Source of the DNA: Octopus bimaculoides
Taxonomy: Eukaryota
Direction: 5' to 3'
Assembly (NCBI RefSeq): GCF_001194135.2
Contig: NC_068981.1
Coordinates: forward strand, 90,486,052-90,550,051
DNA length: 64,000 nucleotides
Made by a program: the position numbers and the translations under genes. Positions 2,021 to 59,650 of the stretch are shown piece by piece. The notes beneath the pieces were generated by a model. That model was given only the letters and a program-made list of their open reading frames with translations. It searched no databases and was not told where the DNA came from. Positions within the stretch are counted from its first letter, which is position 1. Every line of letters starts with the position of its first letter.

Positions 2021-2505
2021 NNNNNNNNNNNNNNNNNNNNNNNNNNNNNNNNNNNNNNNNNNNNNNNNNNNNNNNNNNNNNNNNNNNNNNNNNNNNNNNN
2101 NNNNNNNNNNNNNNNNNNNNNNNNNNNNNNNNNNNNNNNNNNNNNNNNNNNNNNNNNNNNNNNNNNNNNNNNNNNNNNNNNNNNNNNNNNNNNNNNNNNN
2201 NNNNNNNNNNNNNNNNNNNNNNNNNNNNNNNNNNNNNNNNNNNNNNNNNNNNNNNNNNNNNNNNNNNNNNNNNNNNNNNNNNNNNNNNNAACTGGAATAT
2301 CATACCGATGAGGTAATGAAGAGTTTTTCCTTCTAAACCAGAAACATGTATATGATTAACTATGACTAGTTTAGTTCGTTATTTTTCTTCTTGTTTTGCC
2401 TATGTGAGTTGCAGGTAATTGCCATCTGCTGGAGTCTCAGCAATTTAGCTGCTATTTCTGAACTTCAGTATGTGGTGAAGCAACCTGTTGCTGATCCCTT
2501 AATTT

Positions 2506-2541
<36 letters not shown>

Positions 2542-4489
2542 TTACACATCTTTGCCAGTGCCCCTGAACTGGCTCCCATGCAGGTGGCATGTAAAAGACA
2601 CCATTTCGAGCGTGGCCCTTGCCAGTACCTCCTGACTGCCCTTTGTGCCGTTGGCATGTAAAAGCACCCACTACACTCTCTGAGTGGTTGGCGTTAGGAA
2701 GGGCATCCAGCTGTAGAAACTCTGCCAAATCAGATTGGAGCCTGGTGTAGCCATCTGGTTTCACCAGTTCTCAGTCAAATCGTCCATGGAAAGCGGACGT
2801 TAAACGATGACGACGATATACATACATATATATTTGTATGTATATATTGTCTTTGTAGAAGAGGCATGAAACAATGTTTTAATTGGCTCTAAAGTACACA
2901 CTGAGTAAAACAAATTTGAGGCACTGCATTAAAATCATATATTCATAGAAAATTCAATGTAATAAAATTGCATAAAATTCATTTTTTATTTCTATATTAT
3001 CTATTTATTATTATTATTATTATTTTTTTTTTTCAGGGAGTCATCTACTCAAAATAAAAGTAGACTTGTTTGGCTACTTCATTGTAAAACTTACAGCTTG
3101 AGGTCAGGATTGAAAATCAAAGGAGTTTGCTTTACTGAAATATTTCAACAAAATATTGATGTTCCTTCCATCTTAAAAGCAATCCAAAAGATGAACATTG
3201 CTGATAATGTAATAACATTTAGTTTCTTATAAGATTGTTTATGCTATGTGTATGTATTTGTGAGTGTGTATATGTGTGTGTGTTGTTGAACAACACATGG
3301 AAAAGCAATTCCATTAGTTTTCCCACAAAATTCATAGTGTACAAGACCCTGGTGGCTTTGATCCTTCTGTATGCGTGTGAGGGATGGACTCTTACAGCTG
3401 ACATGGAGCAAAAAAATCCAGACATTTGAGCACAAGTGTTTCAGAAGGCTGCTACACATCTTGTACACAGAGCACAAAATGAACAACTTTGTCAGGCTTG
3501 AACCTAGAAAGTTACCCTCAGAGGGTAACTTTCTAGGTTCAATCCCATGGTCATTCATGACTGAAGCAGGTTTTTATTACCTTAATATATATTACTTCTC
3601 TCTCTCTCTCTCTCTATCTCTTGTTACTCGTCCTTCACCTCTCACCGTTACTACTACTACTATCTCTCTCTCTCTCTCTACCTCTCGTTGCTCACTTTTA
3701 TTCTACTTCCTCCCTTCCTTTTCCCTCTGCTACTCTTTCTCTTCACACAGCCTTGGTCACGTGTGTGCGGCTGCTATTTCTTTTCGTTCTTGGAATCACC
3801 AAGCTCGCACNNNNNNNNNNNNNNNNNNNNNNNNNNNNNNNNNNNNNNNNNNNNNNNNNNNNNNNNNNNNNNNNNNNNNNNNNNNNNNNNNNNNNNNNNN
3901 NNNNNNNNNNNNNNNNNNNNNNNNNNNNNNNNNNNTTAATGGTGGCAGCTGATGAAGGGGATGTTTCTATGTGGCCTGCTTGTTTGTTGCACCTTGTTTA
4001 CCATTTTTGTCCTTGTTCTTTTGCCACGTCATGTACCCAGTTATGTATCTATATGTACATGTGGATGAACGTATATACATACATGTACATATATATGCAT
4101 ATACTCATATATTGTTTGTATATATATATATATATATATATCTATATATATATATATATATACACACATATGTATATATATATATAAAAATCCCAATTGG
4201 TAGAGATGTCATATAAATTGCTTTGCAGCATTTGTTCTGATTCTTTGTGCTTTAAGATTAAATCTTGCTGAGGCCAACCTTGCCTTTAATTCTTTTGGTC
4301 TCAATGAATAAAATACTAGCCCTGTACTGAGGTCAATGCTGTACTTTCTTGAACTCTTTCTGTCTATCTTTCCTTCTAGAATAAATCAATTGTAGTCAGT
4401 CCTGGAGAGGGATGGGCTCTGACATCCCAAGACAAGCTGTATGTTATGATGACACCCACTACAATGCCATTAAGGAGTTGTGGTATGGC

Positions 4490-10500: not shown

Positions 10501-12695
10501 TAACGAAACTTGCTACTTCTAAAAAAACTTTGGAAAGATAACTGAAGCTGAGAAATCCAAAAAAGTCTTGTACACATATACATATAAATACACACACATA
10601 TACACACACTGCTGAAATCCAATTTTTAAAATATATACATATCCACTTATTTAAATTTCAGTCATTCTGTGGAAGATGTAATCCAAGCAACTAAAGATGA
10701 CGTCAATAATATTTTAAATGGATCATTTCAAAGTGCAATCAACCTAACATCCATGTGTATCCTTGGATTGTTTCCTGAACAAAGCACTGGTAAGATGTGA
10801 TAAAATTTTTCTTTTTAATAATTACATCATCATCATCATCATTGTTGTTTAACGTCCGCTTTCCATGCTAGCATGGGTTGGACGATTTCACTGAGGATTG
10901 GCGAACCAGATGGCTGCACCAGGCTCCAATCTGATCTGGCAGAGTTTCCACAGCTGGATGCCTTTCCTAACGCCAACCACTCCGAGAGTGTAGTGAGTGC
11001 TTTTACGTGCCACTGGCACGAGGGCCAATCAGGCGGTACTGGCAACGGCCATGCTCAAAATGGTATTTTTTACATGCCACCTGCACAGGAGCCAGCCCAG
11101 CGGCACTGGCAATGACTTCACTCAAATATTTTTCACATGCCAGTAAAACGACGCTGGTAATGATCACGCTCAAATGATGCTACTTACGTGCCCCCGGCAC
11201 AGAAACCAGACAGCTGCTCTGGCAATAATCACGCTCAGAGAATATGAATTTTATAAAACAACATGAATTCTATGAATGGATACCATATTTTCTAGCATAC
11301 AAGTTGAATTCTTCAGATTAAAATTTACAGCTAAAAAAGTAATGTAGACATACACGTCAAATTCCATATGAAATGCAGCAGGAATTGGAAAGATAATGAC
11401 AATGTTTGAATGTTTACACTACATGTTTACACTATATACTACACTGACTTGTATACCAGAAAATTCAATATAAATTTATCATAGTTCCAAAATAATTTGG
11501 AAGTTATAATTCTTGACAACCAAAGGATTTTCCTTCCAACTTAATTGGGTTTCATTTGGCTTAAAATGTTTTAGCAGAGACATACAACATGAAATTGAGA
11601 ACCTACTAAAGCCAATGGGAGACAGGGATTCCTGATGTAGTATTATAAAATGCATCTTGGTTGTCATCACTTGAGGAAGAAGAAGAAATAACCACACAGT
11701 CTACCATTTATTACCAATAAAGATAGCAACTCACTAGACTTCTTATATGGTTTCCTTATTCTAGCTCCTAAACAGTTATTGCAGCCAACTCCATCACTAC
11801 TTAGGTAACCTTGATAACATAATCTATATCAAACAAGCCACCTGAGCAATAGATTTCATTTTATGGCACTTGTGCCAGTGGCATGTGAAAAGACATTCGA
11901 GTGAGTTCGTTGCCAGTGCCGCTGGACTGGCTCCTGTGCAGGTGGCATGTAAAATACACCATTTCAAGCGTGGCCGTTGCCAGTACCTCCTGAATGGCCT
12001 TCGTGCCGGTGGCACGTAAAAGCACCCACTACACTCTCAGAGTGGTTGGCGTTGGGAAGGGCATCCAGCTGTAGAAACTCTGCCAAATCATATTGGAGCC
12101 TGGTGTAGCCATCTGGTTCACCAGTCCTCAGTTAAATCGTCCAACCCATGCTAGCATGGAAAGCGGACGTTAAACGATGATGATGATGAATATCCTTGAT
12201 GCTAATTACTTTTGTACATTTAGCACATTTTGAAGTCTTTGTTCTCAGTCTTCTATTGGCTGGATATAAGTACTGTATTGACTTGTTACTTCATGGCAAA
12301 TAGATTTCGTGATCTCTGTTAGTACTTTCACAGTTTCTTTATTAACCATTAGGTATTTGAGTTTTGACCACTTTTCAACATGTGGATGTTGTCCACATCT
12401 TTGCCAGGTTCTGTAAATAGAGCCAAGTTTACAGCATACAAAGTCATTTATTCCTGGAATCAATAAACTTACATGTTATAAACTTCTCTTAAATCATCAT
12501 CATTATAAATATTGTTTTAATATCTAATATTCCATGATTGCATGGGTCATACAGAATTTATTTGGCAGTTTTTCTGTGGCTGGATGCATATGAATGTGTG
12601 CGTGTGTGTGTGTGCGTATGTGTGTGCGTGTGTGTGTGCGTGAATGTGTGCATGCTTGCTTGCATGCATGTATGTGTGCATGCATGCATGCGTGT

Positions 12696-12732
<37 letters not shown>

Positions 12733-15700
12733 CATATATATAGGTGTAGGCATGGCTGTGTGACAAGCAGCTGGCTTCCCAACCACATGGTTCCAGATTC
12801 AGTCCCACTGCTTGATACCTTGGGTAAGTGTCTTCTACTATAGCCTCAGGCTGACAAAAGCCTTGTGAGTAGATTTGGTAGATGGAAACTGAAAGAAACC
12901 CATCGTATAAGATGCATCAGATGTGGTGTGCAAGAGAGATGACTGCGTTGGTATGGTTATGTGATGTGTATAGACAAGGACAGCTGTGAGAAGAAGTGCT
13001 GAACGGTGGAGGGAACCTGTGGAAGAAGTAGATTCAGAAAGACATGGGACAAGGTGGTAGAGCATGATCTTTCAATGTTGGGCCTCATGTAGGTAATGAC
13101 AAGTAACTGAGACCTTTAACAATATGCCGTGCTTGAGAAGATCCATCAAGTTGAGTGAGATGGTAGTCATGGTCGATGCCAGTGTCTCGTAACTGGTATG
13201 TAAAAAGCACCCTTCAAACGCTGGGAAATATGCTGTACTTGAGAAGACCTGTCAAGCCGAAGTGGGATCATCATAGCCGGTGTTATGTAACTGGCACCTG
13301 TGCCAGTAGCACACGTAAAAAGCACCCACTACACTCTTGGAGTGGTTGGCATTTGGAAGGGTATCTAACTGTAGAAACCAGGTCAAATCAGAATGGAACC
13401 TGGTGCAGCTCCCCAGCTTGGCAGTTTTCATTCAAACTGTCCAACCCATGCCATCATGGAAAACAGATGTTAAATGATGATGGTGATGATGATGATAATG
13501 ATGATGATGATGAATGTATGTATTTATGTGTGTGTCAGTGTTTATATATGTACACATACACACATACACAATGACCATACGCATACACACACACATAATA
13601 TACACATGACAGGCTTCTCCCAGTTTCTGTCTACAAAACTGCTCACAAGTCTTTGGTCCATCTAGGGCTATAGTAATGTGCTGTGCTGGGAGACTGAACC
13701 TAGAAGCGTAGATTTAGGGAGCAAACTTCCTCACCACACACTCATGTATTTGTTATTTGAACAAGGTAAAGGTTTATCGTGACTTCAAAGTTGCAACTCT
13801 GCTGCCTTTGTTGGACTGACAACTGTGGGGTAATTTTGAAGTCACTGTCAATGATTGCCTAATAAGAATAAGAGGGATGTGATTCTCGACTTAAATGTAT
13901 TAAGTGATCCTTCAGTTAATGTTTAACTGTTTTTATATGAAAGACACATAAAAATAAACACACACACATGTATGTAAGGCGCAGGAGTGACTGTGTGGTA
14001 AGTAGCTTGCTTACCAACCACATGGTTCCGGGTTCAGTCCCACTGCGTGGCACCTTGGGCTAGTGTCTTTTACTATAGCCTCAGGCCGACCAAAACCTTG
14101 TGAGTGGATTTGGTAGATGGAAACTGAAAGAGCCTGTCGTATATATGTGTGTTTGTGTGTCTGTGTTTGTCCCCCCATCATTGCTTGACAACCAATGCTG
14201 GTGTGTTTACGTCTTCGTAACTTAGCAGTTCGGCAAAAAGAGACCGATAGAATAAGTACTAAGCTTACAAAGAATAAGTCCTGGGGTCGATTTTCTCAAC
14301 TAAAGGCGGTGCTCCAGCATGGCCGCAGTCAAATGACTGAAACAAGTAAAAGAGTAAAAGAGAGTAAAGAGTACACACACACACACACACACACACAATA
14401 AACATTCACATGCACATACACGTATACACATACATGTGCATGGTGACATGCATACAAATTCAATGGCAGTTTTAGCTAAATGTATTTAAGTGATATGTTT
14501 ATGAATCTGTTTTGCATGATTCATGATGTGAAACTGTGTGTTCAAGGTGATATTGTTATATTTCAGGGCTTTCATTTTTTTTTTAATAAATGAGTGAAGA
14601 ATGAATAGTTAGTACATGTGTTTATTTGACAAAAAAAAAAACCATCCCAAAATATAACAATATTTAAGTGATAATTCTCTAAATTTCCATTTCTCATGTT
14701 TATATTTTATTGACAGAAATCAAAGAATTCTACAAAGTTGCCAAAGCAGAAAAAGGGACAGCATTGTTTATTCTACTCACTGGTTCTGATGCAGCTTATT
14801 TGTAAGATAAGCTACATTTTCTTTCTATGAATTAAGTCATTGTATGTTAGAATTATCAGGCCTTGGTCTTATCACTTTTATTTCTTTACTGCTGGAAGTT
14901 ACTAAAACCTGTTCATTTGAAACTCAAGAAATCTTATCATACCATTCTCTCCTCCCATGTTTATGTATTTGTTTTGAAAGATTCTTGAAGTGAAACGGTT
15001 TGTTGAAACAGATATTTTTATACATGGGGATGGTCATCATTTGCCAATTTCCATTTTGTCTTTCCGTTAGAAAGACAAAATGGATATACAGGACAAAAGA
15101 AGACATATGGGACAGAAAGTTTTCGAAGAGGTCACAGAATGTACAACAAAAGAACTTAGACAAATAAACTAAAAACAGAAATAACAAGAGCACTCAGAGA
15201 TCGCAAACCTTCACCAAGGCAACACCAACGTCCTCTCAACGAATAACCAGAGATAATTTTTAATATGAGAAAATCTGAAATAAACTCAGAAATGAGAATG
15301 CTAAAAATGAACCCAGCTGCTCTCAAAAATCAAGTAAAAAAGCAGAAAAATAAATCCAGAATCCTTGCCCAGTACTGGATCGATCCCAAAATCTAATCAG
15401 TTTATGCCAAGCATAAAGCCAAACATCCCTGAAAGCTTCATCTGAATCCATCCAGTGGTTCTTGAGATATCTTGTCCACGGACAAACTAACAAACAAACA
15501 AGCAAACATGACTGAAAACAATACCTCCTCCTTTGCTAAGGCAGAGGTAATAAAGCTAAAGTGAAGACCAAATAAATAGTGTGTATGCTTAATTAAGCAA
15601 AAGATGACCATCCCCAAGCATAACATTCTCTTTTCATCTTCCAGCATTTCTCTGGTTTTTGTAACAAACTCCATTTACATCATAATCAAGTCATCCTTTC

Positions 15701-17681: not shown

Positions 17682-17691
17682 NNNNNNNNNN

Positions 17692-17727
<36 letters not shown>

Positions 17728-20023
17728 AAACTTTAACGTAATTACCTATCTGAAATAGAGATATCATCAAGTTAGTGTTTATGGTTCCCATAGAAATAGC
17801 CGGTGTCATAATATATCTCCTGACTGAAATGAATTATGTAAATGAGTTATACGGTGTCACTCAAATGCCTACAACTTAGTATATGTTTTGTTTACATTAA
17901 TAAACTTTTATAAATTAAGTAAAAAAATACAATAGATGCAAAATGGGTAAATTAATGTGCAATTAATTTTCAAAAATACGTCAATGATTAAATGCATTCC
18001 ATGCATGTTTTCTATTGAAGGGGTTAGGGGTAAACCTATTCAGTAGTAGGGCATAGTGCATAAATGCTTTAATGTAATATCTAACATATTTGATATTTTA
18101 TATATAAGTAAACAAGACCATAAAGGAAAAATTTGAGAAATAAAATTTGTAATTTAACTGAGAGGGTAATGTAATGTAAAATAAAACTGTGATTAGTAAA
18201 TTCGGTGGAGAGGAAAGAAACGAAAACGGAAACTTTAATTGAAATATCAAGCACTGAAGGAACAAGCGTGAAAATATGAAAATATTTTAAAAATATACGA
18301 TAATAGGTAATAATTTATAAAAAATATATGGGAAGCTATTGCAAGTTCTAGCGAATAATAGATTAGTTAATTACTAAATTATTAAGTAAATAAATTATGG
18401 GTTAATTAAAAAAAATTAATTTAAAAATTGATGGGAAGTAAATAAAATTAAGTTACATAATTGAAGTCAATATTATGTGTTTATAGTTAAATTAAAGTAA
18501 AAAAAAAAATGTAAAAATAAAGTAAAAATACAGTAGGATAGAACATGAAAGTTAAAAGGATGAACGATAACGAAAAAAGTCAACATATTTGTTAATTAAG
18601 AGAAGGGCTTAAAAATATTTCATAAAATTTCAGAGAAAGGAGTATTAAAGCATTGCAAAATATTCTTATTCAACGTAATGGCATTAGCCGTTAATATAGG
18701 AGCATGGAAATGAACAAAAAGTCTTAAAGCATAAGAGTGATAAAGACAGAAAATAGAAAAGGCAAAATTAGGCTGGTGTTTAAAATAAAAGAAATAATTA
18801 AAAATAAGTATGAAAAGTAAAGTTGGAGATTTAGTAATAAGACACTAGAAATTGTAAGATAAATAATCTAAATAAGATATAAAAATTTAATTTAGAAGAT
18901 GCAGAAGTTAGGCCTATACATACATACATACATACATACATACATACATACATACGTACATACATACGTGCATACATACCTGCATGTATATATGTGCATA
19001 TACATACGTAGAAATACACACACACAGATAAATCTCTTTCTATGTTGAATTAAATAAGAATATGACTACTAAAGTAGCTACAAGTGCCTTAAGTGGAAGA
19101 ATGTACCAAGTCGTTTCTATTCATATAAATTTCGGTGTTCTGATTTGTGGGATTAATATACAAAAATTTCTATTTGAAGCAATTACATATTAGTAAGGAG
19201 CAGCTTAAGTGAAAATTAGTTTATTTGTGGATAGTTTACAGATTCGAAGAGAAATATTCCTAATTAAATTTTTAATAACGCTCTTAGAGTAGTTTCCACC
19301 CCGTCAGACAGTTGAAAGAATTTAAAAGAGATTTAAAGCGCCTTGTAGGTACCTGTCCCTCCATTGGTCAGTTCAGATCACATGGGTTTTTAGCCTATCA
19401 GGGCCACATTATTTCAAATTATATTTTTAGGTTGACGAGTTTTAGAAAAGATGTTGTCGTCATCTTGCCGGCATTCAGCAAAACCTGCTTATTACTTTGG
19501 CTACTGCACATGGCGGGGTAGGCAAGATGCTGGCTCGACCAGAATGATGTCTAGTTATTTGATTGGTACCAACATCTTGCCTACTCTACAATGTACAATA
19601 TTCAGTGAAATACACGTACCACTGAATATATTATCATGCAGAATGTCGACAAAGTATTGCTAACATCCTGTCTGCGATAGGTGAGATGATGTTGCATTGA
19701 CAGCATAAAGAACCACGTATCTGGAATTGACTAATGGAAGCCTAAATACTATTAACAAGCCATTATAGATTTCTTTAAATTCTATCCTCTCTGTACTCCA
19801 AACTTCTGGAGAGCTGTCCCTAATTTTCGACCACAAATTAATGTGGGCTGAGTTAAACTGTTTTTAGATACAGGTAACTCCAACCAAGCGTGTTGAGAGC
19901 TACACTCTTCCACATGTATATCCAGTAAAAGAAGTGTTCTTATTGCATGATAGCATATCATAACTGGTAACCGTAGAAAAGCTTTCAACTGCACGTTATG
20001 AGGTCATTAACCAAATGATATTA

Positions 20024-20066
<43 letters not shown>

Positions 20067-23000
20067 TGCCCAAGAATAGTATGTGTTTGGTTGAAGATAG
20101 TATGACACTAAGCCATCATCCGGTGGCTGTACTCTATCAAATGTATTGCGTAATCCTTCAAATGCAAAACTATTTTTATTACACACATACCCGCAATGCT
20201 AGAAACAGCAACCAAAATCTCATTCAAAATGTTCACTTTGTTGGAAAACTTTTGAAGGTAGGCCTCGATATGAGCCGTCTTGGGCCTAAACAATAACAAC
20301 AAAAGCAACAACCACATCTCGCCATTACCAACACCAACAACAAACACAATCACAACAACAATAATTAACAGAATTCAGTGTTTATGTGCCAAAGGGATAA
20401 TATTTTGAAGTAAAATTCTTTGACAGACAATCTGTTCGAGAATTCGATACAAAATAGATGTGTCTAATATGATGATAGATCAAATATTGACTTTATACAA
20501 GTTGTATAAAGCAATTGGAAGGATTTTAGCTCAAGAACAGCCTGGTTCGAAAAGAAAAACAGTAATTAAACTGCTCCAGCTAGGTCCGTCCTGTTTTATT
20601 CATAGTTGAAATATGGCTGTATCTAATGTATTTTTTTAATAAAGCAAGATTCTCTCTTTCCACTTTTTGACATGATGCAATACCAGTTGTTGTACAAGTG
20701 TCTCTACCACGATCCTACCATTTCTAAAACTTGTAGATTTGTGACAATGAAAAGAACTAGATTATAATGGCGACAAAAACACAGAAACGCTAGTGTGCTA
20801 AATAAAATATTTTGTTTGCCTCCCTTGACATTCTGAATTTAAATCCCAGAGAGACGAGCTTCGCTTTCATTCTTCAGTGAGTCGATTAAATATGTATCAG
20901 TAATGTAACAAGGCCGAATAAAATCATTACAATGCCAAACTTAGAAATCGATATTGGACAAAGATCAAACCAGGAATCTCCTAATGGACTTACGTGTACT
21001 GTAATTATTACAGTAAGACGACACACTCATTCGTTCGACCTGCTTAGAATGAGCAAACATACCTCCATCATACTACTCGTCATTGTCTCAGTAAACAAGA
21101 CAGTAGAGTAGAAGACGCACTAGATAATGTATATAGAAAAGAGAGGGAATAATCACGACTAGCAGGTCTTTGATCATATATGTCTAGTAAATGAGCGCTG
21201 ACGTGGGGGGGGGGGTAGAGTTAATAAACAAACTTAATTTAATTTTATCATTGAAATTATTACCGTATTTTCCATCAAATAAGTTGAATTTTTTAGATTA
21301 AATTTAGTCAAAAAATGTTAGGTCGACTTATACACAAGGACACACTTTAGAGGACCAAGTATTCGATGTGAAATACAGCTGGATTTGGAAAGCTAGTAAC
21401 GATGTTTAAATGTTTAGATATATTACATAGAGCTGTATGCAGGAAAGTACAATATCGACATTACGGCAGCCAGCTGGCATAATTGGTAGAGAGTCTGGAA
21501 AAAAATTGCTTTTCAATATTTCTCCCACNNNNNNNNNNNNNNNNNNNNNNNNNNNNNNNNNNNNNNNNNNNNNNNNNNNNNNNNNNNNNNNNNNNNNNNN
21601 NNNNNNNNNNNNNNNNNNNNNNNNNNNNNNNNNNNNNNNNNNNNNNNNNNNNNNNNNNNNNNNNNNNNNNNNNNNNNNNNNNNNNNNNNNNNNNNNNNNN
21701 NNNNNNNNNNNNNNNNNNNNNNNNNNNNNNNNNNNNNNNNNNNNNNNNNNNNNNNNNNNNNNNNNNNNNNNNNNNNNNNNNNNNNNNNNNNNNNNNNNNN
21801 NNNNNNNNNNNNNNNNNNNNNNNNNNNNNNNNNNNNNNNNNNNNNNNNNNNNNNNNNNNNNNNNNNNNNNNNNNNNNNNNNNNNNNNNNNNNNNNNNNNN
21901 NNNNNNNNNNNNNNNNNNNNNNNNNNNNNNNNNNNNNNNNNNNNNNNNNNNNNNNNNNNNNNNNNNNNNNNNNNNNNNNNNNNNNNNNNNNNNNNNNNNN
22001 NNNNNNNNNNNNNNNNNNNNNNNNNNNNNNNNNNNNNNNNNNNNNNNNNNNNNNNNNNNNNNNNNNNNNNNNNNNNNNNNNNNNNNNNNNNNNNNNNNNN
22101 NNNNNNNNNNNNNNNNNNNNNNNNNNNNNNNNNNNNNNNNNNNNNNNNNNNNNNNNNNNNNNNNNNNNNNNCAAAATAAATAAAAAAAAGAATTTTATTG
22201 GTATTATATCCAATATGAAAGCAGAATCGTTAGCACGCTGGACAAAATGCTTACCGCTATTTCGTTCATATTCACATTTTGAGTTCAAATTTCGCCGAGA
22301 TTGACTTTGCTTTTCATGTTATCAGAGTCAATGAAATAAGCACTAGCTGAACGCGTGGCCTAATGATTAATGCGTTGCATTCACAATCACCACATTATGG
22401 GTTCGATTCCTTGACCGGGTGACGTGATGTGTTCTCGAGCTAAACACTTCATTTCACGTTGCCCTAGAGCAGTCTGGGGACCGGGATGCCAAGGAATAAA
22501 CTCAACGTTTCCACTGCCTGTCAGTTAATGTGACAAAACGAGGTTGAGGTTTTAGTTGCACTCCGACCTCGTAAAATCCTCACCAGCAACGACTACCCAA
22601 GCATACCCTCTAGTTGGAGGGTTGTCACCTGAGTGCCACAAAGATGTCATCCGCTAGAAGAGTAGAGAATCACCAATAAATGGTGGATGCAGTGACGTGC
22701 TGTTACAGCGCATGCACACACACACTCCATATTACTGCTACTAGCAGTGGAGTCGATGCACTCGACTAACTAACCTCCCCAATATGTTTGGCCTTGTGCC
22801 TATACCAGAAATGATATAGTAGCTTTAATGAATACATGGATTTTAGATTGCTGACAAAAGCATCTATTAAAATTTGTTGCTTCTTTCCCTTTGACCTTAG
22901 CTGAGTTTTGAAGGAGTAAAAATGATGTTATTGTTTTATTGTGTCAGTTTATTAAACATTGCAACAGAAACGTGTCACGTATTACAGGATATCACATGTT

Positions 23001-26000
23001 GATACGATAAAGAAAACACGATTAACATCAAATAAATGAAACTGCGTGCGCTCACGTGTGTGTTAGTGTATGTGTGAAGGTGAGTCTCTAGCTCTGAGTC
23101 TTAGCTCTGAGAGCTAAAACAAAATGATCAAAAGAATGTCAGATAAATACTCGCACACGCGATTCTATGCTTACATATATATATACACACACAAACACAC
23201 ACACACACATACACGCGCACGATCACACGCACACACACACACTAACATGCACGTACACTTACATAGTCACACACATACACACAGACGGACATATATATAG
23301 AGAGAGAGAAATACTACAAACACGAAAATATCATTAATTGTTAATTGAAAAATGTTCGTATGTTTATATGAGGGATTTTGTTATAAGAAGAAAAGTGAAA
23401 GAAGATAATAGAAAGAAAAAAATAATTAATTTTAGAGAGAAAAAAATGCCCTTACAAGGGCAGCAACAATGAATAAATGTCAAAAAATAATCAAGCAGAT
23501 GTCAATTAACTGTTAAAAAGTTGAAAATTGAATAAAACTAAATATAACAAGTTATGAAGGAAGAGCTGTACTGTATTAAAGAAAACTTTGTTAACAAATT
23601 CTCATCTGTTGTTGACACATTTGAAATCCGGTGTGATGTGTTTGCGCATGCGCTTGCGTATTAATGTGTGAGAGTGCCTTAGCATTTATAAGTGTGATTG
23701 TACGATCGGACGAGGGTGTCGTTAGGTGATGTATATGTGTGTTTGTATCTTTCCACGTGTGTGACATCAAACAGACTAAAAGACACTAAATAAACAACGT
23801 GTATATGTATGAGAAAGTGTGTGCGCCCACGAGTAATTATGTGTATGCACGTGCGCGTATGTGTGCGTGTGCGTGTGTGTTTGTGTTAAGTGTTTCAAGA
23901 ATATTTTGAGCGTCTTTCATCTTTTAATTTTTACTTGTTTCACTTATTAGACTGCGGTCATGCAGGAGCACCACTTTGTCGAATGAATCGACCCCCCCCC
24001 CCAGTAAATGCCGGACTATACGTAGTCATTATAAAATGCCGGAGTATATGTAGACACTGTAAAGAGACTGTCTATATGTACATGGGATGATTAAACAGTT
24101 ACGCATAGAACCTGAAACATAAAAATGTCAATAAAAATATAGACCTTTACAAGTTAGAATNNNNNNNNNNNNNNNNNNNNNNNNNNNNNNNNNNNNNNNN
24201 NNNNNNNNNNNNNNNNNNNNNNNNNNNNNNNNNNNNNNNNNNNNNNNNNNNNNNNNNNNNNNNNNNNNNNNNNNNNNNNNNNNNNNNNNNNNNNNNNNNN
24301 NNNNNNNNNNNNNNNNNNNNNNNNNNNNNNNNNNNNNNNNNNNNNNNNNNNNNNNNNNNNNNNNNNNNNNNNNNNNNNNNNNNNNNNNNNNNNNNNNNNN
24401 NNNNNNNNNNNNNNNNNNNNNNNNNGCGAAAACACCTAAAACTCCACGAGGCTCCGGCAGGGGATGGTGGCGAACCCTGCTGTACTTTTTCACCACAATT
24501 TTCTCTCACTCCTACTTCCTGTTTTTGTTGTGCCTGTAATTCAAAGGGTCAGCCTTGTCACACTGTGTCACGCTGAATATCCCCGAGAACTACGTTAAGG
24601 GTACACGTGTCTGTGGAGTGCTCAGCCACTTGCACGTTAATTTCACGAGCAGGCTGTTCCGTTGATCGGATCAACTGGAACCCTCGACGTCGTAAGCGAC
24701 GGAGTGCCATCATGTATGTGTGTGTGTGTGTGTGTGTCTGTGTCTGTGTGTGTAAATCTCGAGCAAAGAGAATAAGTGCTCAACACCGCATTGGTGAATA
24801 AAATTTCTTTATTTGTGTATTAAGGCTATCATAGGTTTCATGTTAAAAAGATAACTTAATATCCGAACAATTTTTCAAGTCGATCATATGGAAGAATGGT
24901 GTTCGTCTCCAAAATGTGAGAATGAATAATATGCAGTGTGTTGTGCAAATCGATGTGTAATTATTTCCCTAGTTTTGTGTGAGTGTGTGTGTATGTGGGT
25001 GTATGTGTGTACGTTTATGTGCCATGACAATGGATAATGCAGCTGTATTTGTATACATATATGTGCGAGTGTGTGTGCGTGTATGTGTTCGTATGCGAAG
25101 ATCAGGGTTTGTCTGGTATTTTGTGAAAAAACTTACTACGCCTATGTATATGTATGTGGGTAAAAGTTTCTGCAGTCCTTTTTACACGTGAGTGTGTCTA
25201 AGTACGTCGATGTGTCTATGTGTCTGCATGTTCATGGATGATGTGTGTTTGTTAGTGTGTGTATGTGTCTGTGTGTGTGTGTGTGAGTGTGTTTATTTGT
25301 GTGTGTGTGTGTGTGTGTGNNNNNNNNNNNNNNNNNNNNNNNNNNNNNNNNNNNNNNNNNNNNNNNNNNNNNNNNNNNNNNNNNNNNNNNNNNNNNNNNN
25401 NNNNNNNNNNNNNNNNNNNTTGTGACTAATCATTTTTTTGTCTCTTAACTCTTAGATGGAACTTTTTCCAGACATTTTGCCCAAACTCCTACAATCTGGG
25501 CAGCCACTTGTAATTCTGTTTATAAAATCTATGGAGGAAGATTCCTATTCAAATATTCAGCAGTTGTCTATGTCTAAGCTTGGTCAAGAAATGGTTTTCA
25601 CTTGGATAAATGTGTAAGTATGCTATATTTCATCTTTTAATAACAACCACAAAATAGGCTTCATTATGGGCAGAGTGGACTTTTTAAATATATAACATTA
25701 GAAAGGGCATCCAGCTGTAGAAACCATGCCAAAACAGACATGGAGCCTGGGCAGCTCTTCAGCTGGCCAGCTCCTGTCAAACTGCCCTACCCATGCCAGC
25801 ATGGATAATGGATGTTAAATGATAATGATGAATAAGAAGTTAAACCCTTTAACATTTAGGTTACTCTGTCGAATGTAATGCTTGTCTATTCACATTGCTT
25901 TGGATTAAGCATGATTTATCTCATAGCTTTGTGATTTTGATGATGTGATTAGAATGACATTGTAGGGTAGGTATGAGAGGCCGGTCAGAACATAAAACAG

Positions 26001-29000: not shown

Positions 29001-32000
29001 TCTCTACACTACCAATGTTATCCAAGGGAAAGGCTGATACAACTTGACAGCAGTGACGTCACAACTCATTTCAAACAGCTCGATAAACTGGAGCAACATG
29101 GAATAAAGTATCTTGCTCAAGAACACAACACACAGCCCAGTCTGAGAACCAAACTCACTGTTTCCTGATTGTGAGTCTGACGCTCTAACCAGTCAGCCAT
29201 GTGCCTTCACCTGTACCACTTCTCTTATACTTGTTGGTGTACAACACCACCTGTTGCAATCTGAAACATTACTGTTTTGTTAGTGCGAGAGTATATGTGT
29301 TAGTGTTCTGCATGTAGCCAGTGCAGGTGTTAGTACAAGGTTTAATAGTGTTCTGTCTTACAGAGTTTAGTTGTTTGTTGTCATGTCATGTCGTGACCTA
29401 GAACTGGTTCTCAACCAATTTTTGCTTATGGACACTCATGATTTTTATTTTCCTAAGGTGCACCCACAGCCATACAATATTTAAAAGAGCCTGTCATATA
29501 TTCATAATTAAATATTATTAGGTATTCATTATCATCATCACCATCATTTAATGTCTGTTGTCCATGCTAGCATGGGCTGGCAAGCTGGGGAGCTGCACCA
29601 GACTCCAGTCTGTTTTGATATGGTTTCTACAGCTGGATGCCCTTCCTAATGCCAACCACTCCAAGAGTGTAATGGGTGCTTTTATGTGCCACTGGCATGG
29701 GTGCCATTTGTGTGACACTGGTGTCTGCCAGTTGTATAAAAAAATAGTTAGAATATTTTTATAATTAAATAATTAAAATATTTTGTGTATAGCAGAAGTA
29801 TAACCAATTTATTGTACATAAATTTTAACAACAAAATCTTATATGGACCACAAGGGCCATATGGACACTGGGTGAGAACCACTGATCTAGGATAAATAAC
29901 CTTGTGTGAAGAACAAAATATGAATGGTGAATAATATCCATTTACTGGGCTTGCAAAATCAATATGCAATCGGGCCAAGGTTCATATTTTGTAGTAGGTA
30001 GTTTCACTGCCAGCACACATCCTCTGACCAGGTTTTCAACTTCCTTGTCCATGCTTGGCCAGTATGTGAAACTTCACATCAATACTTTCATTCTAGAGAT
30101 ACCTGGGTGTCCCACATGGAACTCTTTTAGCATTCTCTTCTGTAATATCTATGATATGACCACTCTCTGAGCATACATTTGTACACCATCACATATAGAG
30201 TACATATTCACATCTTGGTGGTTCTATGCATCAGACCTTTCTTTATTTCCTTTTGTCAACCACAGTTTTCTTTTTGTCTCGTTAATAAATTTTTCATTTC
30301 TCTTTTCACTAAACATTTTGCACAAAATATCAACTGTGTTGGTGAAATTTGTCAGATGCTTTTTTTTCTCATGCTCTGCTGCTGCTAGTTTTTTAAAAAC
30401 TAGATGCGTTTTCATTTCGTCTGTCCAATCTTGACATTCTTTTTCGAAAGTAAGCCTCGAAGATTACTATTTTCTCAGGATCATATTTGAGTTCAATTAT
30501 GGAATTTGCTACATGATCAGGTGAAAATGTATTCTCTGGTTTGGTTATCAACTTCGTTAGTTGTAACATTTGCTGCTGCAATCCTTGTTGTTGTTTTTGC
30601 AACTCAAGTATCCCAGCTAACAAGCCTTCCATATTTTACAACTTTTGTTTCTTTTTTGTTGAGGTATTTAATTCTCCATGTGAATTAGTTTAAACTCTGT
30701 GTGAATGTTTTTTTTTCACTCAGTGTAAATTTGTTTTTCCTCATCACCACGGTTATAAAGCAGTCTTTTGCTACAGTTGTATCTGCCCTTTGACAGATAT
30801 TGTTATATTCCGAAGTCGTCAACAGAATGTTTGTATCTGGCACTGTACGACTCCCGGTCATACAGTGTTATTATCCTGTAAAGGTTGGATCATTATAACA
30901 TCCATTCAGTATCACAGTATAATTACTATATCAGCACAGAGACAACTATCAACAGTCTACATGTACTCTCGGCCTTCTTTTGATCTTTCTCTGTTGACCG
31001 GCCACTGGTTTATTTATAATGGCTGGCTACTACCACTTTTTACTGGGAGGGGTGTACAGTTTCACTATACAACAATGCTCTAACAATTCTGGTCTCTATT
31101 CTTGCAATTACAACTTAGGCAATGCATGTGTCTGTCTTTTAGATTTTTCATTTATTAGAAAAGATTTTAATTGTTTTCTTAATCAGATAAAATGCAACAT
31201 GCTGAAATGGGATTACCAAGAAGAGAAAATACAAAATTTTTGAAGAGCAACCAATTTCAATTCACAGGTGAGTTAATCATTTATGAAGTAAGTGGCTTAT
31301 GAGAGGAACAGTAGACAAGAAGGTGTTTTAGTTTTTTGATGTAGCTGTATGCATTATGCCTCATGAGTCATTGCCCAAGACCTTCCTGACAAGAAGTGTT
31401 GAGAGGAAGACAGCAAGAAGCTACCAAGAACATTTGTGGATTGACAACATCAAAGAATGGGTTGGTTGATTGTCAGAATGCAATACAATACAGAGGTTAA
31501 CTGGAGAATCTTGGCAAGCTGACCTCTAGTCACAGGGAAGGGACCTACCTGGCTGGTTGATGCATCATGCAAAAATATCTGAAAACCTGTACTGATGTAT
31601 TTATTTAGTGAATGATTCATCCAGCCCATATCAGCATCAAAAAGAAAATACTGAGTAAAAACAATAGTTATGTAAACACAGGCTCCTGTGCAGGTGACAC
31701 GTAAAATACACCATTTTGAGCGTGGCCGTTGCCAATACCGCTTGACTGGCCTTCGTGCTGGTGGCATGTAAAAGCACCCACTACACTCTCAGAGTGGTTG
31801 GCGTTAGGAAGGGCATCCAGCTGTAGAAACTCTGCCAAATCAGATTGGAGCCTGGTGTAGCCATCTGGTTCACCAGTCCTCAGTCAAATCGTCCAACCCA
31901 TGCTAGCATGGAAAGCGGACGTTAAACAATGATGATGATGATGCATACTTGTATATTCTTGTTGTTCTGAAATCATTTACAACTTTATCCCTTTAGAACT

Positions 32001-32990: not shown

Positions 32991-34354
32991 AATCTTAGTT
33001 TTACTGTCAAACAACAAAATAATGATTAAAATTCTGATATAAAACTCTCAGTATAGTTCATTTTTCCTTTTTGTGATTCAAAACATCTCTGTCTGTTCAG
33101 ATGTTGCTTTACATTGACACAGAATGCAATTAGCCTGCATCTTTATCACTTACACAGTTTCATCTTCACACCTATTGTCAGTTACCCCAGACCTTTGTCA
33201 TCTCTTTGATGAGGTTCAGAGATCAGTCTTCACCACTTTGTCCCAAGTCTTCCTGCAAGCTCCCATCCACATTAAGTGATTAGCTTTTCTTCTTTATACA
33301 GCTGTCCACAAATCCACACCAGCACAGTCTTCTCTCTTGCACACTACAACTGATTCCAGTTATGTCCAGTTTTTCTCTCAGCGCACTTCTACTATGTTAT
33401 TCAGGCACTTTTACATTTGGAGTTCAAATTCTGCCCAAAACAGATTTGCTCTTTCATCTTCTTTGGATTAATAGTAAAAAAAAAAAGTACAAGATTAATT
33501 GATAAAAGGACATGCTAGTTCATTAGCTCAACAAATACTGCAACAAAATTTATCTAACTTTAGCAATTTAGCCACTTCATAACACTTCGAAAAAAAAAAA
33601 AAAGAAGAAAACTTTGAGTTTCATAAATGAAAGAATTCTTTCTACATCTCATCTGTCATGACTGCTTTATTTCTTCACCAAGATATATTTTTTTTAATAT
33701 TTTAGTAGATATATATAAATAAAATTTATAGATGTAATTTTTTTTAAATCAATTTTTAAAGGNNNNNNNNNNNNNNNNNNNNNNNNNNNNNNNNNNNNNN
33801 NNNNNNNNNNNNNNNNNNNNNNNNNNNNNNNNNNNNNNNNNNNNNNNNNNNNNNNNNNNNNNNNNNNNNNNNNNNNNNNNNNNNNNNNNNNNNNNNNNNN
33901 NNNNNNNNNNNNNNNNNNNNNNNNNNNNNNNNNNNNNNNNNNNNNNNNNNNNNNNNNNNNNNNNNNNNNNNNNNNNNNNNNNNNNNNNNNNNNNNNNNNN
34001 NNNNNNNNNNNNNNNNNNNNNNNNNNNNNNNNNNNNNNNNNNNNNNNNNNNNNNNNNNNNNNNNNNNNNNNNNNNNNNNNNNNNNNNNNNNNNNNNNNNN
34101 NNNNNNNNNNNNNNNNNNNNNNNNNNNNNNTTAGTAATAACAGGTAGTTTCACTAGACAAACATTTGCTGTACACCAACTGACATTTTTATGACACGAAT
34201 TTTGTATTTTCTGCACTTTGAGGACATTTTTGCCAAATCAGTCTTTTTCTTCTTTATTATTATTATAACGTTCTAGTCTTTTAAAATCATATATGCTTCA
34301 GATTTAGTAATAGCAATTTTCAAATGCAACAAATAAAAAAAATATATATATTAA

Positions 34355-34536
34355 GCACGTAAAAGTACCCACTACATTCTCGGAGTGGTTGGCGTTAGGA
34401 AGGGCATCCAGCTGTCGAAACTCTGCCAGATCAGATTGGAGCCTGGTGCAGCCTTCTGGCTTGCCAGTCCTCAGTCAAATCGTCCAACCCATGCTAGCAT
34501 GGAAAGCGGACGTTAAACGATGATGATGATGATGAT
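34355..34536 (+). mobile_element. Family B element, 5'-truncated
   Basis: (GAT)n tail. Confidence 0.85.
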
Positions 34537-39600: not shown

Positions 39601-41205
39601 GTACTATAGAGCCAGAACTGGTTTCAGCCGGGTTGGTATCGAAAGAGTTGAACCAAAAATCCATCTCTTGCAGGGAGACAGCACTGCCGATGACAAATAC
39701 ATAACATCAAACAATCTGCTTAGTCAAAACAAGTACTATGAATGTTATTGGTATAAACTAACACCTCAATCTCTTTAACTCCAACATATAAAATTAATGA
39801 TTTCTAATTTTAGCACAAGATCACAAGTGTTAGTAGATGTGTGGATTTGATTAAATTAACCCAATATATTACAATCACTCATTTTTATCAACCCCAAAGG
39901 ATGTATAGCAAAGTTGACCATGGCAAGTTTTGAACTTGGAATGTAACTAAATATTACTCCATTTGTCTGAACTGTTTAGGCATTGAGCAACCATTCATTA
40001 AGAAAGGGTCATAAATCCAGGCTTTCATACTGTTAGTGAATCATCATTTAACATCCACTTTTCCTAGCTACATAAACCAACTAGACTTTATGACAGAGCA
40101 CACAGAAAAGAAAATTAACTTCAAATGTTTTCATAAGCAAAAACCAATTTACAAAATTTCCTATATTTGATTAGCACTAAATGAAAGAAAAACACCATTA
40201 TGATTATTGGTTGACAGTTATGCCCATATTGCCCTTTTTTAGTTATAAAAACTAATACAGTTTTGACTCATATATATAACCCTTTAGCATTCAGATTTTT
40301 CTGTCAAATGTAATAGCTATTCATTCAAAGGGTTTTTAATTTATTATGCACAATCTTGTAACTTAGAGATTTTGATGATGTGATTATTTTTAGAATGACA
40401 TAGGATAGGTGTGATAGTCCAGATCTAGCTGGTTTGAGCATAAAACAAGAAGAATATTTGGGTCTGATATTGGCCGGTTTAAATGCTAAAGGGTTAAACT
40501 GGCAAAAGACCAAAACATGGACACAACACACCTTTACTACCATACTGCATGCAGTACAACTACCGCACATTATGAAATATAGTACAGAATCACACAAGAC
40601 CGTGACAAATATCACTCGTCTACCTTTGAGGGATCTGTGGGTGTCACTTGAGCATTTGACAGGAATTGATAGGGCCAAAGACTGCCTTGTGCTCCAGTGC
40701 CTTCTTTGGTGTAGTTCCTATAGCTGGATGCCCTCTCTAATACCAACCACTTTACAGTGTGTACTGGATGAATAATTCATACCACCAATACTAGTGAGGC
40801 AGTCATGTAATAGTTTGTAAGACTACCAAATGTAATATAAATAAAATAAAAGTGATAATAAAATACCTGTCCATAACCAATATATTAATCTTACCTGATG
40901 CATTGGTCTGAGAAACAAAACTCGTGATATATCAGAAGGCAATGGAGAAAGCTCTTTGATAACCTGGTCTTCCAACAGTTTTTTGCACTGTGCAAAAGAT
41001 ATCCTGGACAACTTGGGACACTTCCCAATGGAGATCTTCTTCAACACACGACATGCACTACCTAAAAGATAAACAAAAAAATTATATATTAATAAGTATG
41101 GAATTTGGTGCAGCTCTGCAGCTTACCAGTTTCAGTCAAGCTGTCTAATCCATGCCAGCATGGAAAGCAGACGTAGTAAAGATTTCTATTTACAAATATA
41201 TATTA

Positions 41206-41238
<33 letters not shown>

Positions 41239-45992: not shown

Positions 45993-46029
<37 letters not shown>

Positions 46030-49000: not shown

Positions 49001-49445
49001 TGACCCCTCACATGTAAAAATAAACATTCACGTCATAGAAATCTCAAAGCTACAAGTTAATGCATGATTAAGTTCAAAACAAAGTGAATGAATAAGTATT
49101 ACATTTGGTAGAGTAATCTGAATACTAAAGGGTTAAGTGACATAACTAAATGCTACTTTAGTAGTTATTTAATTTATGCACATTTATTGCTATTATGATG
49201 ACACCCTTCCTTCAGATTTGAATGAGATCCTCTTTTATTTTTTATTTTTTACTTGTTTCAGTCATTTGACTGCAGCCATGCTGGAGCACCGCCTTTAGTC
49301 GAGAAAATCGACCCCAGGACTTATTCTTTGTAAGCCTAGTACTTATTCTATTGGTCTCTTTTTGCTGAACCGCTAAGTTACGGGGACGTAAACACACCAA
49401 CATCGGTTGTCAAGCGATGGTGGGGGGACAAACACAGACACACAA

Positions 49446-49484
<39 letters not shown>

Positions 49485-55378: not shown

Positions 55379-55467
<89 letters not shown>

Positions 55468-57660: not shown

Positions 57661-57707
<47 letters not shown>

Positions 57708-59618: not shown

Positions 59619-59650
59619 TTTCACATTAACACACTTTCTTTCCAGCTAGC
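59337..59650 (-). CDS. FBXO38: FBXO38 first coding exon (UTR 59619-59650; ATG at 59618; F-box)
   Basis: ttcacattag acceptor, CAG|gtaaag donor; strong Kozak context aaaATGg. Confidence 0.9.

What the first reader, a model, noticed from the sequence alone, without database searches (positions are those of the whole stretch)
19506..19596. miR-31-family-like hairpin with a divergent 3' half and the same seed on both strands
The + strand 5p arm AGGCAAGAUGCUGGCUCGACCA (19520-19541) pairs with UUGGUACCAACAUCUUGCCUAC (to 19584): 13 of the first 14 positions pair, with one C:A mismatch, then ACCAG/UUGGU, a loop of about 20 nt, a 2-nt overhang and a basal stem out to 19506/19596. Nucleotides 1-15 equal recalled human miR-31-5p, and the C:A mismatch and the CCAACAU.UUGCC star motif match recalled human miR-31. 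Nucleotides 16-22 differ, suggesting a lineage-specific paralog. The antisense strand also folds (the C:A becomes U:G) and would yield AGGCAAGAUGUUGGUACCAAUC, with the same GGCAAGA seed and the protostome-type U11, i.e. a possible mirror miRNA. Coleoids are known for miRNA expansion; I cannot tell whether this locus is already catalogued.
Basis: partly seen in the sequence, partly recalled or inferred. Interest (0 to 1): 0.8.

Follow-up and report, generated by a model that had tools for sequence, protein, structure and literature searches.

The report
miR-31-like microRNA hairpin, divergent top
A real, single-copy hairpin carries the first 14-15 bases of the ancient microRNA miR-31 on both arms, so it is most likely an ordinary miR-31-family gene or a decaying copy of one, and the "same seed on both strands" is simply what a near-perfect palindrome gives.

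Summary
The hairpin at 19498-19604 is real. It folds far better than shuffled sequence on both strands (z -5.0 on +, -8.2 on -). It is unique within the window. Its lower 14 positions match miR-31 exactly: AGGCAAGAUGCUGG on +, AGGCAAGAUGUUGG on -. The Rfam mir-31 model is the best hit on both strands (about 31 bits) but stays below its gathering score (51). It aligns only the base of the stem and skips the 35-nt apical part, which shows no similarity to the conserved GGCAUAGCUGA half of mollusc and human miR-31.

My best reading is a MIR-31-family miRNA gene with a replaced apical half. The strand is unresolved. A 22-nt mini-palindrome 51 nt away (GGCAAGATGACGACAACATCTT) looks like a collapsed tandem copy, which shows local duplication and decay.

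The identical seed on the antisense strand follows automatically from a stem paired through the seed. It is not separate evidence for a mirror miRNA.

I could obtain no orthologous DNA, no small-RNA reads and no MirGeneDB sequence. Expression, conservation, copy number and catalogue status are therefore untested. The octopus miRNA paper lists a single Ovu-Mir-31. Interest is modest.

The parts
19498..19604 (.). Whole imperfect palindrome (pri-miRNA-like stem-loop), foldable on either strand
   Evidence: MFE is -39.5 kcal/mol (+) and -47.4 (-) for 19495-19605. The region 19200-19900 has no other copy in the window.
19520..19541 (+). Candidate + strand 5p guide AGGCAAGAUGCUGGCUCGACCA (seed GGCAAGA). 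Nt 1-15 equal human miR-31-5p; 14 of the first 15 equal mollusc miR-31.
19563..19584 (+). Candidate + strand 3p (star) UUGGUACCAACAUCUUGCCUAC, ending with a 2-nt 3' overhang past U19582
   Evidence: The 5p/3p duplex energy is -22.6 kcal/mol.
19561..19582 (-). Candidate - strand 5p guide AGGCAAGAUGUUGGUACCAAUC. Nt 1-14 equal mollusc miR-31, with U at position 11.
19518..19539 (-). Candidate - strand 3p GUCGAGCCAGCAUCUUGCCUAC
   Evidence: duplex energy -27.1 kcal/mol.
19534..19568 (.). Apical 35 nt with no similarity to the canonical miR-31 upper stem (GGCAUAGCUGA and its partner). It is only weakly paired: a 4x1 internal loop plus ACCA/UGGU at probability about 0.4 on +, and a 12x3 loop on -.
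   Evidence: (local end skipping 32 model positions and 35 bases).
19530..19530 (.). The one asymmetric position inside the duplex. C19530 faces A19572, which is a C:A mismatch on + and a U:G wobble on -.
19448..19469 (-). Mini-palindrome GGCAAGATGACGACAACATCTT. It joins the first 9 nt of the 5p arm to the last 10 nt of the 3p arm motif, and is probably a centre-deleted tandem copy of the hairpin.
   Evidence: one match in the window, 0.01 expected. It does not fold beyond chance (z -0.07).

Best explanation
This is a member of the bilaterian MIR-31 microRNA family in an AT-rich invertebrate genome. The genome is probably an octopus, but that is unverified.

Inferred mechanism, none of it shown here:
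1. A Pol II transcript through 19498-19604 folds into the stem-loop.
2. Drosha/Pasha cuts about a dozen base pairs above the base of the stem, releasing a 65-nt pre-miRNA (19520-19584 if the + strand is used).
3. Dicer removes the loop.
4. The 5' arm beginning AGGCAAGAUG is loaded into Argonaute and represses mRNAs that carry UCUUGCC sites, as canonical miR-31 does.

What differs from canonical miR-31 is the upper third of the hairpin. Guide positions 15/16-22 and their partners have been replaced by unrelated, poorly paired sequence. Any 3' supplementary pairing would therefore differ, and processing may be less efficient.

The transcribed strand cannot be decided from the sequence. I put it at roughly + 50%, - 30%, both 20%.

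The neighbouring mini-palindrome indicates that the locus once held at least two tandem copies, one of which collapsed.
For: - Sequence shows directly: an exact 14-15 nt match to miR-31 sits at the 5' end of the 5' arm on each strand. About 0.04 matches are expected per window even with one mismatch allowed. My own estimate for such a 14-mer plus its near-complement 35-50 nt away is about 1e-4 per 2.7-Gb genome.
- Rfam mir-31 is the top family on both strands.
- The fold is highly non-random. The MFE index of the 65-nt precursor is 0.86 (+) and 0.97 (-), and 17-18 of 22 duplex positions can pair.
- The arms are best paired in the miRNA duplex (15 of 16 Watson-Crick at 19518-19533) and worse in the basal stem (10 of 16). 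That pattern fits a miRNA gene rather than a fresh inverted duplication.
- It is single copy in the window, with no repeat overlap.
- On the + strand the solid lower stem spans 12 positions (19508-19519), and 22 positions lie above the proposed cut. This fits the 11-13 + 22 bp Microprocessor geometry known from vertebrate and fly work.
- The nearby remnant is far beyond chance. That suggests a locus where mir-31 copies have duplicated locally.
- Octopus vulgaris has an expressed Mir-31 whose target motif is TCTTGCCA.
Against: - The Rfam score of 31 bits is well below the gathering score of 51.
- The otherwise invariant 3' half is absent on both strands. Biomphalaria, Haliotis and Tegillarca all show AGGCAAGAUGUUGGCAUAGCUGA, and human shows GGCAUAGCU.
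- The upper stem is weak: ACCA/UGGU pairs at probability about 0.4 and there is an asymmetric internal loop.
- No basal UG at -14, apical UGU or CNNC at +16-18 sits at its canonical position on either strand. These motifs are established mainly for vertebrates.
- No expression, processing or conservation data could be obtained.
- The octopus study lists only one Mir-31 despite sequencing 18 tissues. If that gene is canonical and lies elsewhere, this locus went undetected there.
Confidence: 0.6

Rival explanations
1. It is a decaying, non-functional relic of a mir-31 duplicate (a pseudo-miRNA). The lower stem is still recognisable. The apex was lost or replaced, for example by deletion at the centre of the palindrome, and nothing is processed from it.
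For: - The apical 35 nt are unrelated to the family and poorly paired. Both the guide's 3' half and its partner changed together without keeping good pairing. That looks like segment replacement, not compensated drift.
- A second copy 51 nt away has clearly collapsed to a 22-nt mini-palindrome that no longer folds.
- The score is below the Rfam threshold.
- Only one Mir-31 is catalogued for O. vulgaris.
Against: - Fourteen to fifteen guide positions, including the whole seed, are intact on both arms, with only one non-Watson-Crick position in the duplex. A neutral relic old enough to have lost its apex should also have point changes there.
- The fold statistics and MFE index are in the range of real precursors.
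- Divergent 3' halves do occur in functional MIR-31 paralogues, for example C. elegans miR-73 and miR-74 (from memory).
Confidence: 0.3
2. It is a mirror (bidirectionally transcribed) miRNA locus. Both strands are transcribed and processed, giving two guides with the same GGCAAGA seed but different 3' halves.
For: - Both strands fold, and the - strand folds even better.
- The Rfam scores are equal.
- Each strand has its own G:U pairs that become C:A mismatches on the other strand, so neither strand is clearly the only one selected for.
Against: - The shared seed is automatic for a stem paired through nt 1-14, so it adds no evidence.
- On the - strand the helix runs 33 positions (19600 to 19568). 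Eleven to thirteen bp from its base, or 22 bp from its apical junction, puts the Drosha cut at about 19587-19589. That gives a 5' end GUAGAGUAGG... and a different seed (inference from the Microprocessor ruler model).
- There is no evidence of transcription on either strand.
- No antisense entry for Mir-31 appears in the octopus paper's held tables.
Confidence: 0.1
3. It is a chance or repeat-derived palindrome (a MITE or foldback element) that merely resembles miR-31.
For: - Hairpins are abundant in this repeat-rich window.
- Unrelated bacterial palindromes share the same core, GGCAAGATGCTGG...CCAGCATCTTGCC. This shows the motif can arise in other contexts.
Against: - It is unique within the 64-kb window and does not overlap the window's dispersed repeats.
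- The arms are only 78% complementary overall but 15 of 16 in the miRNA duplex.
- No terminal repeats or target-site duplication are evident (read).
- The match begins exactly at the expected guide 5' end.
- The probability of the sequence match plus the fold is negligible (and my estimate).
Confidence: 0.03

Closest known systems
MIR-31 family (Rfam RF00661 mir-31; MirGeneDB MIR-31): hsa-mir-31, and mollusc miR-31 such as hdh-miR-31 and the Biomphalaria sequence named bgl-miR-72-5p
   Same: - Seed GGCAAGA, with guide nt 1-14/15 identical.
- The guide lies on the 5' arm.
- The star motif is CCAACAUCUUGCC (human: CCAACAUAUUGCC).
- The + strand shares the human C11:A mismatch.
- The pre-miRNA is about 65 nt.
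   Different: - Guide nt 16-22 (GGCAUAGCUGA region) and the matching star segment are unrelated.
- The upper stem is poorly paired.
- The Rfam score is 31 bits against a gathering score of 51.
Divergent MIR-31 paralogues in other lineages: C. elegans mir-72/73/74 and planarian miR-31b (recalled from memory, not checked here)
   Same: The family seed is retained while the 3' half drifts after lineage-specific duplication.
   Different: Those are validated by reads. Here expression is unknown, and the upper stem looks replaced rather than co-evolved.
Sense/antisense miRNA pairs such as Drosophila mir-iab-4 / mir-iab-8 (from memory)
   Same: One hairpin locus is able to fold on both strands.
   Different: In iab-4/iab-8 both strands are shown to be transcribed, and the products differ in register and seed. 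Here transcription is unknown, and the identical seed is a by-product of palindromy.
GC-rich bacterial repeat palindromes found in metagenome contigs (L004-L009, L011, L012) and the perfect palindrome in L010
   Same: They share the core GGCAAGATG(C/T)TGG ... CCA(G/A)CATCTTGCC.
   Different: - They lie in contigs of 58-65% GC (47% for L010).
- The stems are perfect, 30-38 bp long, with different flanks (GGATGAAAGGC...).
- Several copies occur per assembly.
- They are unrelated to animal miRNAs, and the resemblance is coincidental.

Membership tests
MIR-31 (miR-31/72) microRNA family | Seed GGCAAGA at positions 2-8 of the 5' arm product | tested here: met
   The sequence is present at 19521-19527 (+) and at 19581 down to 19575 (-). 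That the product really starts at 19520 or 19582 is inferred, not shown.
MIR-31 (miR-31/72) microRNA family | Score at or above the curated Rfam gathering threshold for RF00661 | tested here: not met
   31.3 bits (+) and 31.0 bits (-) against 51. There is no hit at gathering level in the whole window.
MIR-31 (miR-31/72) microRNA family | Conserved 3' half of the guide (GGCAUAGCU[GA]) | tested here: not met
   The + strand reads GGCUCGACCA and the - strand reads GGUACCAAUC. The canonical form was seen in Biomphalaria, Haliotis, Tegillarca and human.
Canonical animal miRNA gene (MirGeneDB criteria) | Hairpin with at least 16 complementary positions between the two arms and a loop of at least 8 nt | tested here: met
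   17-18 of 22 positions pair on + (10 + 3 + 4-5), and 18-19 pair on -. The loop is about 20 nt. The upper 4-5 pairs have probability of only about 0.4.
Canonical animal miRNA gene (MirGeneDB criteria) | Reads from both arms with homogeneous 5' ends and 2-nt 3' offsets (Drosha and Dicer signatures) | not testable with these tools
Canonical animal miRNA gene | Conservation of the hairpin in related species, with orthology or synteny | not testable with these tools
   - Attempts to reach orthologous DNA through ORF 'proteins' around the hairpin found nothing.
- Pattern scans of the metagenome, prokaryote-genome and viral collections gave only unrelated bacterial palindromes or nothing.
Canonical animal miRNA gene | Microprocessor geometry: about 35-bp stem, cut about 11-13 bp from the basal junction and about 22 bp from the apical junction | tested here: inconclusive
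   - On +, there are 12 well-paired positions below 19520 and 22 above. Weaker pairs continue to 19498, and an AU-rich apical helix can also form.
- On -, the 33-position helix would place the cut at about 19587-19589 rather than 19582.
- Sequence motifs are absent at their canonical positions.
Mirror (sense/antisense) miRNA locus | Transcription and processing of both strands | not testable with these tools
   Only the ability of both strands to fold was shown.
MITE / foldback repeat | Multiple dispersed copies with terminal inverted repeats and target-site duplications | tested here: not met
   It is single copy in the 64-kb window. Genome-wide copy number is not testable here.

The most novel reading that the evidence does not exclude
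This is an uncatalogued, lineage-specific MIR-31 paralogue whose apical half was swapped for new sequence and which is transcribed from both strands. Two guides with the same ancient seed but different 3' halves (AGGCAAGAUGCUGGCUCGACCA and AGGCAAGAUGUUGGUACCAAUC) would then be made from one locus.
Probability: 0.07. Interest if true: 0.55.

Novelty: new member of a known kind. Interest (0 to 1): 0.3.

Why it matters
miR-31 is one of the bilaterian miRNAs whose full 22 nt are almost invariant from molluscs to humans. If this locus is expressed, it would show a copy that keeps nt 1-14/15 but has exchanged the rest. That would be a small, clean case for asking how much the 3' half of a deeply conserved miRNA matters, and how hairpin apices turn over. 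The adjacent collapsed copy illustrates how miRNA palindromes die. If it is simply the species' catalogued Mir-31, or a dead duplicate, it is routine annotation.

Tried and rejected
1. Rfam at gathering thresholds over the whole window gave nothing. The mir-31 hit appears only with permissive E-value thresholds.
2. I looked for other miR-31-like sites. GGCAAGATG at 5404 (-) has no hairpin. The site at 19461 (-) is the mini-palindrome and does not fold beyond chance.
3. I looked for a miRNA cluster across 12-27 kb. Only microsatellite-driven mir-297/466/3149-type hits appeared.
4. I tried to fetch orthologous DNA in several ways:
   - Exact look-ups of the two ORFs spanning the hairpin failed.
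   - Two chimeric ORF queries, covering the hairpin +/-300 nt and then 14.5-28.7 kb, found no homologue. This also argues against conserved coding exons of 50 aa or more near the hairpin.
5. Collection scans with a palindromic mir-31 pattern gave 9 metagenome hits, all GC-rich bacterial palindromes. The prokaryote-genome and viral collections gave none.
6. A literature search for the exact guide and star strings found no papers. The octopus miRNA paper and its preprint hold no Mir-31 sequence. The MirGeneDB 3.0 paper and the WGD preprint have no held supplements.
7. I tried to decide the host gene and strand:
   - An FBXO38-like gene lies on the - strand at about 40.8-59.6 kb.
   - Its 3' exons could not be traced towards the hairpin, because the relatives' contigs (L013, L014) end too early.
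   - There is no PDB homologue.
   - The hairpin is at least 21 kb beyond the last recognisable exon, so whether it is intronic or intergenic stays open.
8. Strand arguments cancel out:
   - U11 on - is the ancestral state, but mammals made the same U-to-C change.
   - Positions 13-16 match 3 of 4 on each strand.
   - Flank matches to the Rfam consensus are 15 of 25 on each strand.

Full report
**Observation**

The sequence at 19498-19604 is an imperfect palindrome.

On the + strand:
- AGGCAAGATGCTGGCTCGACCA (19520-19541) faces TTGGTACCAACATCTTGCCTAC (19563-19584).
- The pair table shows 19520-19529 paired with 19573-19582, a C19530:A19572 mismatch, and 19531-19533 paired with 19569-19571.
- Above that comes a 4x1 internal loop, then ACCA/UGGU at a pair probability of only about 0.4.
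- Below 19520 there are 12 mostly paired positions down to 19508. Weaker pairs, interrupted by mismatches, continue to 19498:19604.
- The fold is -38.9 kcal/mol against -23.1 +/- 3.1 for shuffles (z -5.0).

On the - strand:
- The fold is stronger, at -45.7 kcal/mol and z -8.2.
- The reason is that C:A mismatches in the + strand's basal stem become G:U pairs, and the C:A in the duplex becomes U:G.

The one exception is the G19542:U19563 pair, which is not in the preferred fold.

**Is it more than chance?**

Hairpins alone are not special here. A sliding 100-nt scan finds dozens at or below -33 kcal/mol, mostly (TA)n/(TG)n microsatellites.

The sequence is what is special:
- AGGCAAGATGYTGG occurs once on each strand, exactly at the two arms. 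About 0.04 matches are expected, even with one mismatch allowed.
- The 25-mer around the + arm is unique.
- The 700-nt region has no other copy in the window.
- Rfam's mir-31 model (RF00661) is the best family on both strands, at 31.3 and 31.0 bits (E about 5e-5 for the 501-nt search, about 1.5e-3 for 15 kb).
- It does not reach the gathering score of 51, and nothing in the window does at gathering level.
- The alignment explains the shortfall. The model matches the basal stem and GGCAAGAUGYUGG / CCARCAUCUUGCC, then uses a local end to skip 32 consensus positions and 35 bases. The apical third of the hairpin is not homologous to the family.

**Comparison with known miR-31**
- Mollusc miR-31 is AGGCAAGAUGUUGGCAUAGCUGA. 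This was seen in Biomphalaria (listed as bgl-miR-72-5p, PMC7328434), in Haliotis (hdh-miR-31, PMC11989308) and in Tegillarca reads (PMC3972184).
- Human miR-31 is AGGCAAGAUGCUGGCAUAGCU, with star UGCUAUGCCAACAUAUUGCCAU.
- The + arm here equals the human form for nt 1-15 and shares its C11:A mismatch.
- The - arm equals the mollusc form for nt 1-14.
- After that, neither strand resembles GGCAUAGCUGA. The + strand reads CUCGACCA and the - strand reads UACCAAUC.

**The "same seed on both strands"**

This is a direct consequence of the stem being paired through nt 1-14. The antisense 5' arm is the reverse complement of the sense 3' arm, so it reads the same as the sense 5' arm wherever pairing is Watson-Crick. 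It tells us that either direction of transcription could give a GGCAAGA-seed RNA. It does not tell us that both happen.

**Which strand?**

The evidence is balanced:
- The Rfam scores are equal, and flank matches to the consensus are 15 of 25 on each strand.
- Guide positions 13-16 match the canonical GGCA at 3 of 4 on each strand.
- Each strand owns about three G:U pairs that are C:A on the other.
- The single duplex asymmetry can be read two ways. It is a neutral star-arm A-to-G change if the - strand is functional. It is the same U11-to-C change that mammals fixed if the + strand is functional.
- Geometry leans slightly to the + strand. There, 12 solid positions lie below the proposed cut and 22 above, close to the 11-13 + 22 bp Microprocessor rule (established knowledge from vertebrate and fly work).
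- The - strand helix runs uninterrupted for 33 positions (19600 to 19568). Both rulers would cut near 19587-19589, giving GUAGAGUAGG... rather than a miR-31 5' end.
- Canonical UG, UGU and CNNC motifs are absent at their standard positions on both strands.

My estimate is + 50%, - 30%, both 20%.

**Surroundings**
- The window is about 35% GC, with ten N gaps and many microsatellites.
- A dispersed repeat of about 300 bp is present in at least 12 copies. I recall this repeat as an abundant octopus SINE, but that is memory, not a test. The organism was not established by any tool.
- An FBXO38-like gene lies on the - strand. Its F-box exon is at about 59.3-59.6 kb. Further exons lie at 55.8-56.4, 54.35-54.5, 52.4-52.9, 49.9-50.1, 48-49 and 43.8-45.5 kb, and probably at 42.0-42.2 and 40.8-41.1 kb.
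- The hairpin is at least 21 kb beyond the last recognisable exon.
- ORFs of 50 aa or more between 14.5 and 28.7 kb have no homologue in the 5.8-billion-protein index, so no conserved exon is evident nearby.
- No other conserved miRNA lies within 12-27 kb.

**A neighbouring remnant**

Fifty-one nt from the hairpin, at 19448-19469 on the - strand, lies GGCAAGATGACGACAACATCTT. It joins the first 9 nt of the guide arm directly to ACAACATCTT, which matches 9 of 10 with the star motif CCAACATCTT.
- The pattern GGCAAGATG-N(0-30)-CATCTT is expected 0.01 times per window. Being this close to the hairpin makes chance negligible.
- It does not fold better than shuffles.
- I read it as a tandem copy whose centre was deleted.
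- Together with the non-homologous apex of the main hairpin, this suggests a locus where mir-31 palindromes duplicated and lost or exchanged their centres.

**Interpretation**
- Most likely (about 0.6) this is a MIR-31-family miRNA gene with a replaced apical half that still yields a GGCAAGA-seed guide.
- The main rival (about 0.3) is a non-functional relic. Supporting it are the weakly paired, unrelated apex, the dead neighbour, the sub-threshold Rfam score, and the single Mir-31 in the O. vulgaris catalogue.
- That catalogue entry (PMC9699675) has target motif TCTTGCCA and expression in visceral ganglion and intestine. No -P or -as variants appear in the held tables.
- Against the relic reading: the seed and 14-15 guide positions are intact on both arms, and the duplex has only one non-Watson-Crick position.
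- A true mirror locus (about 0.1) and a chance or repeat palindrome (about 0.03) are less likely.

**What could not be done**
- No small-RNA reads and no MirGeneDB sequences were available.
- No cephalopod genome could be searched by DNA.
- Efforts to reach orthologous DNA via ORF-derived "proteins" failed.
- Collection scans returned only GC-rich bacterial palindromes that coincidentally share the core motif, or nothing.
- Expression, processing precision, conservation, genome-wide copy number and catalogue status therefore all remain open. Each is cheap to settle with public data (see next steps).

**Verdict**

The feature is real and correctly described. Its identity as a miR-31-family hairpin with a divergent upper half is supported. 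The "mirror miRNA" idea adds little. Novelty is at most a new member of a known family, and the locus may already be catalogued. Interest is 0.3.

Noticed in passing
window 19448-19469 (-): The mini-palindrome GGCAAGATGACGACAACATCTT lies 51 nt from the hairpin. It looks like a centre-deleted tandem copy of the mir-31-like hairpin. The pattern is expected 0.01 times per window, and it no longer folds.
   Followed up: partly
L004-L009, L011, L012 (ERZ1066118/120/136 metagenome contigs) and L010 (Ga0209824_10033557): A family of perfect 30-38-bp palindromes (GGATGAAAGGCAAGATGCTGGAT...ATCCAGCATCTTGCCTTTCATCC) sits in 58-65% GC, presumably bacterial, contigs, with several copies per assembly. It resembles a REP/terminator-type repeat and shares the miR-31 core only by coincidence. 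L010 (47% GC) is a separate perfect 32-bp palindrome.
   Followed up: partly
window about 40800-59650 (-): An FBXO38-like gene lies here. Its F-box exon is at about 59316-59645. A large conserved exon lies at 55771-56418, with further exons at 54350-54493, 52447-52916, 49890-50102, 47991-48989 (proline-rich) and 43808-45517 (serine-rich), and probable LRR-like exons at 41991-42176 and 40826-41122. Close relatives occur in Logan runs ERR12921338-41 (93% aa identity), and one near-identical ORF is P0015.
   Followed up: partly
window 2549-2805, 10830-11140, 11879-12189, 13292-13496, 25698-25831, 29526-29706, 31681-31943, 34355-34536, 55153-55333, 58670-58857 and others: A dispersed repeat of about 300 bp (core ...GTCCGCTTTCCATGCTAGCATGGGTTGGACG...CCAACCACTCCGAGAGTGTAGTG...) is present in at least 12 copies at 75-93% identity, in both orientations. 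It is probably a SINE, and no tRNA-like gene was called by ARAGORN. A second short repeat translating to ...[18 protein letters not shown]... also recurs.
   Followed up: partly
window 19600-19631 (+): A perfect 10-bp inverted repeat, ATATTCAGTG ... CACTGAATAT, with a 12-nt spacer lies immediately 3' of the hairpin. It is too short for a miRNA (weak mir-881 hit, E 1.6).
   Followed up: no
window 12580-12760, 13510-13610, 18915-19030, 23040-23225: (TG/TA)n-type microsatellites give sub-threshold Rfam hits to the repeat-derived families mir-297, mir-466, mir-3149 and mir-568 on both strands. These are false positives of composition.
   Followed up: yes
window 30227-30635 (-): Two overlapping ORFs (79 and 80 aa; ...FSPDHVANSIIELKYDPEKIVIFEAYFRKRMSRLD...) look like a retroelement gag-like fragment. 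This was not tested against any family library.
   Followed up: no
window 2021-2289, 3811-3935, 17682-17691, 21529-22171, 24161-24425, 25320-25419, 33763-34130, 45763-45946, 57915-58656, 58936-58961: There are ten runs of N (assembly gaps). The nearest to the hairpin are at 17682-17691 and 21529-22171, so about 1.8 kb on each side of the hairpin is contiguous sequence.
   Followed up: yes
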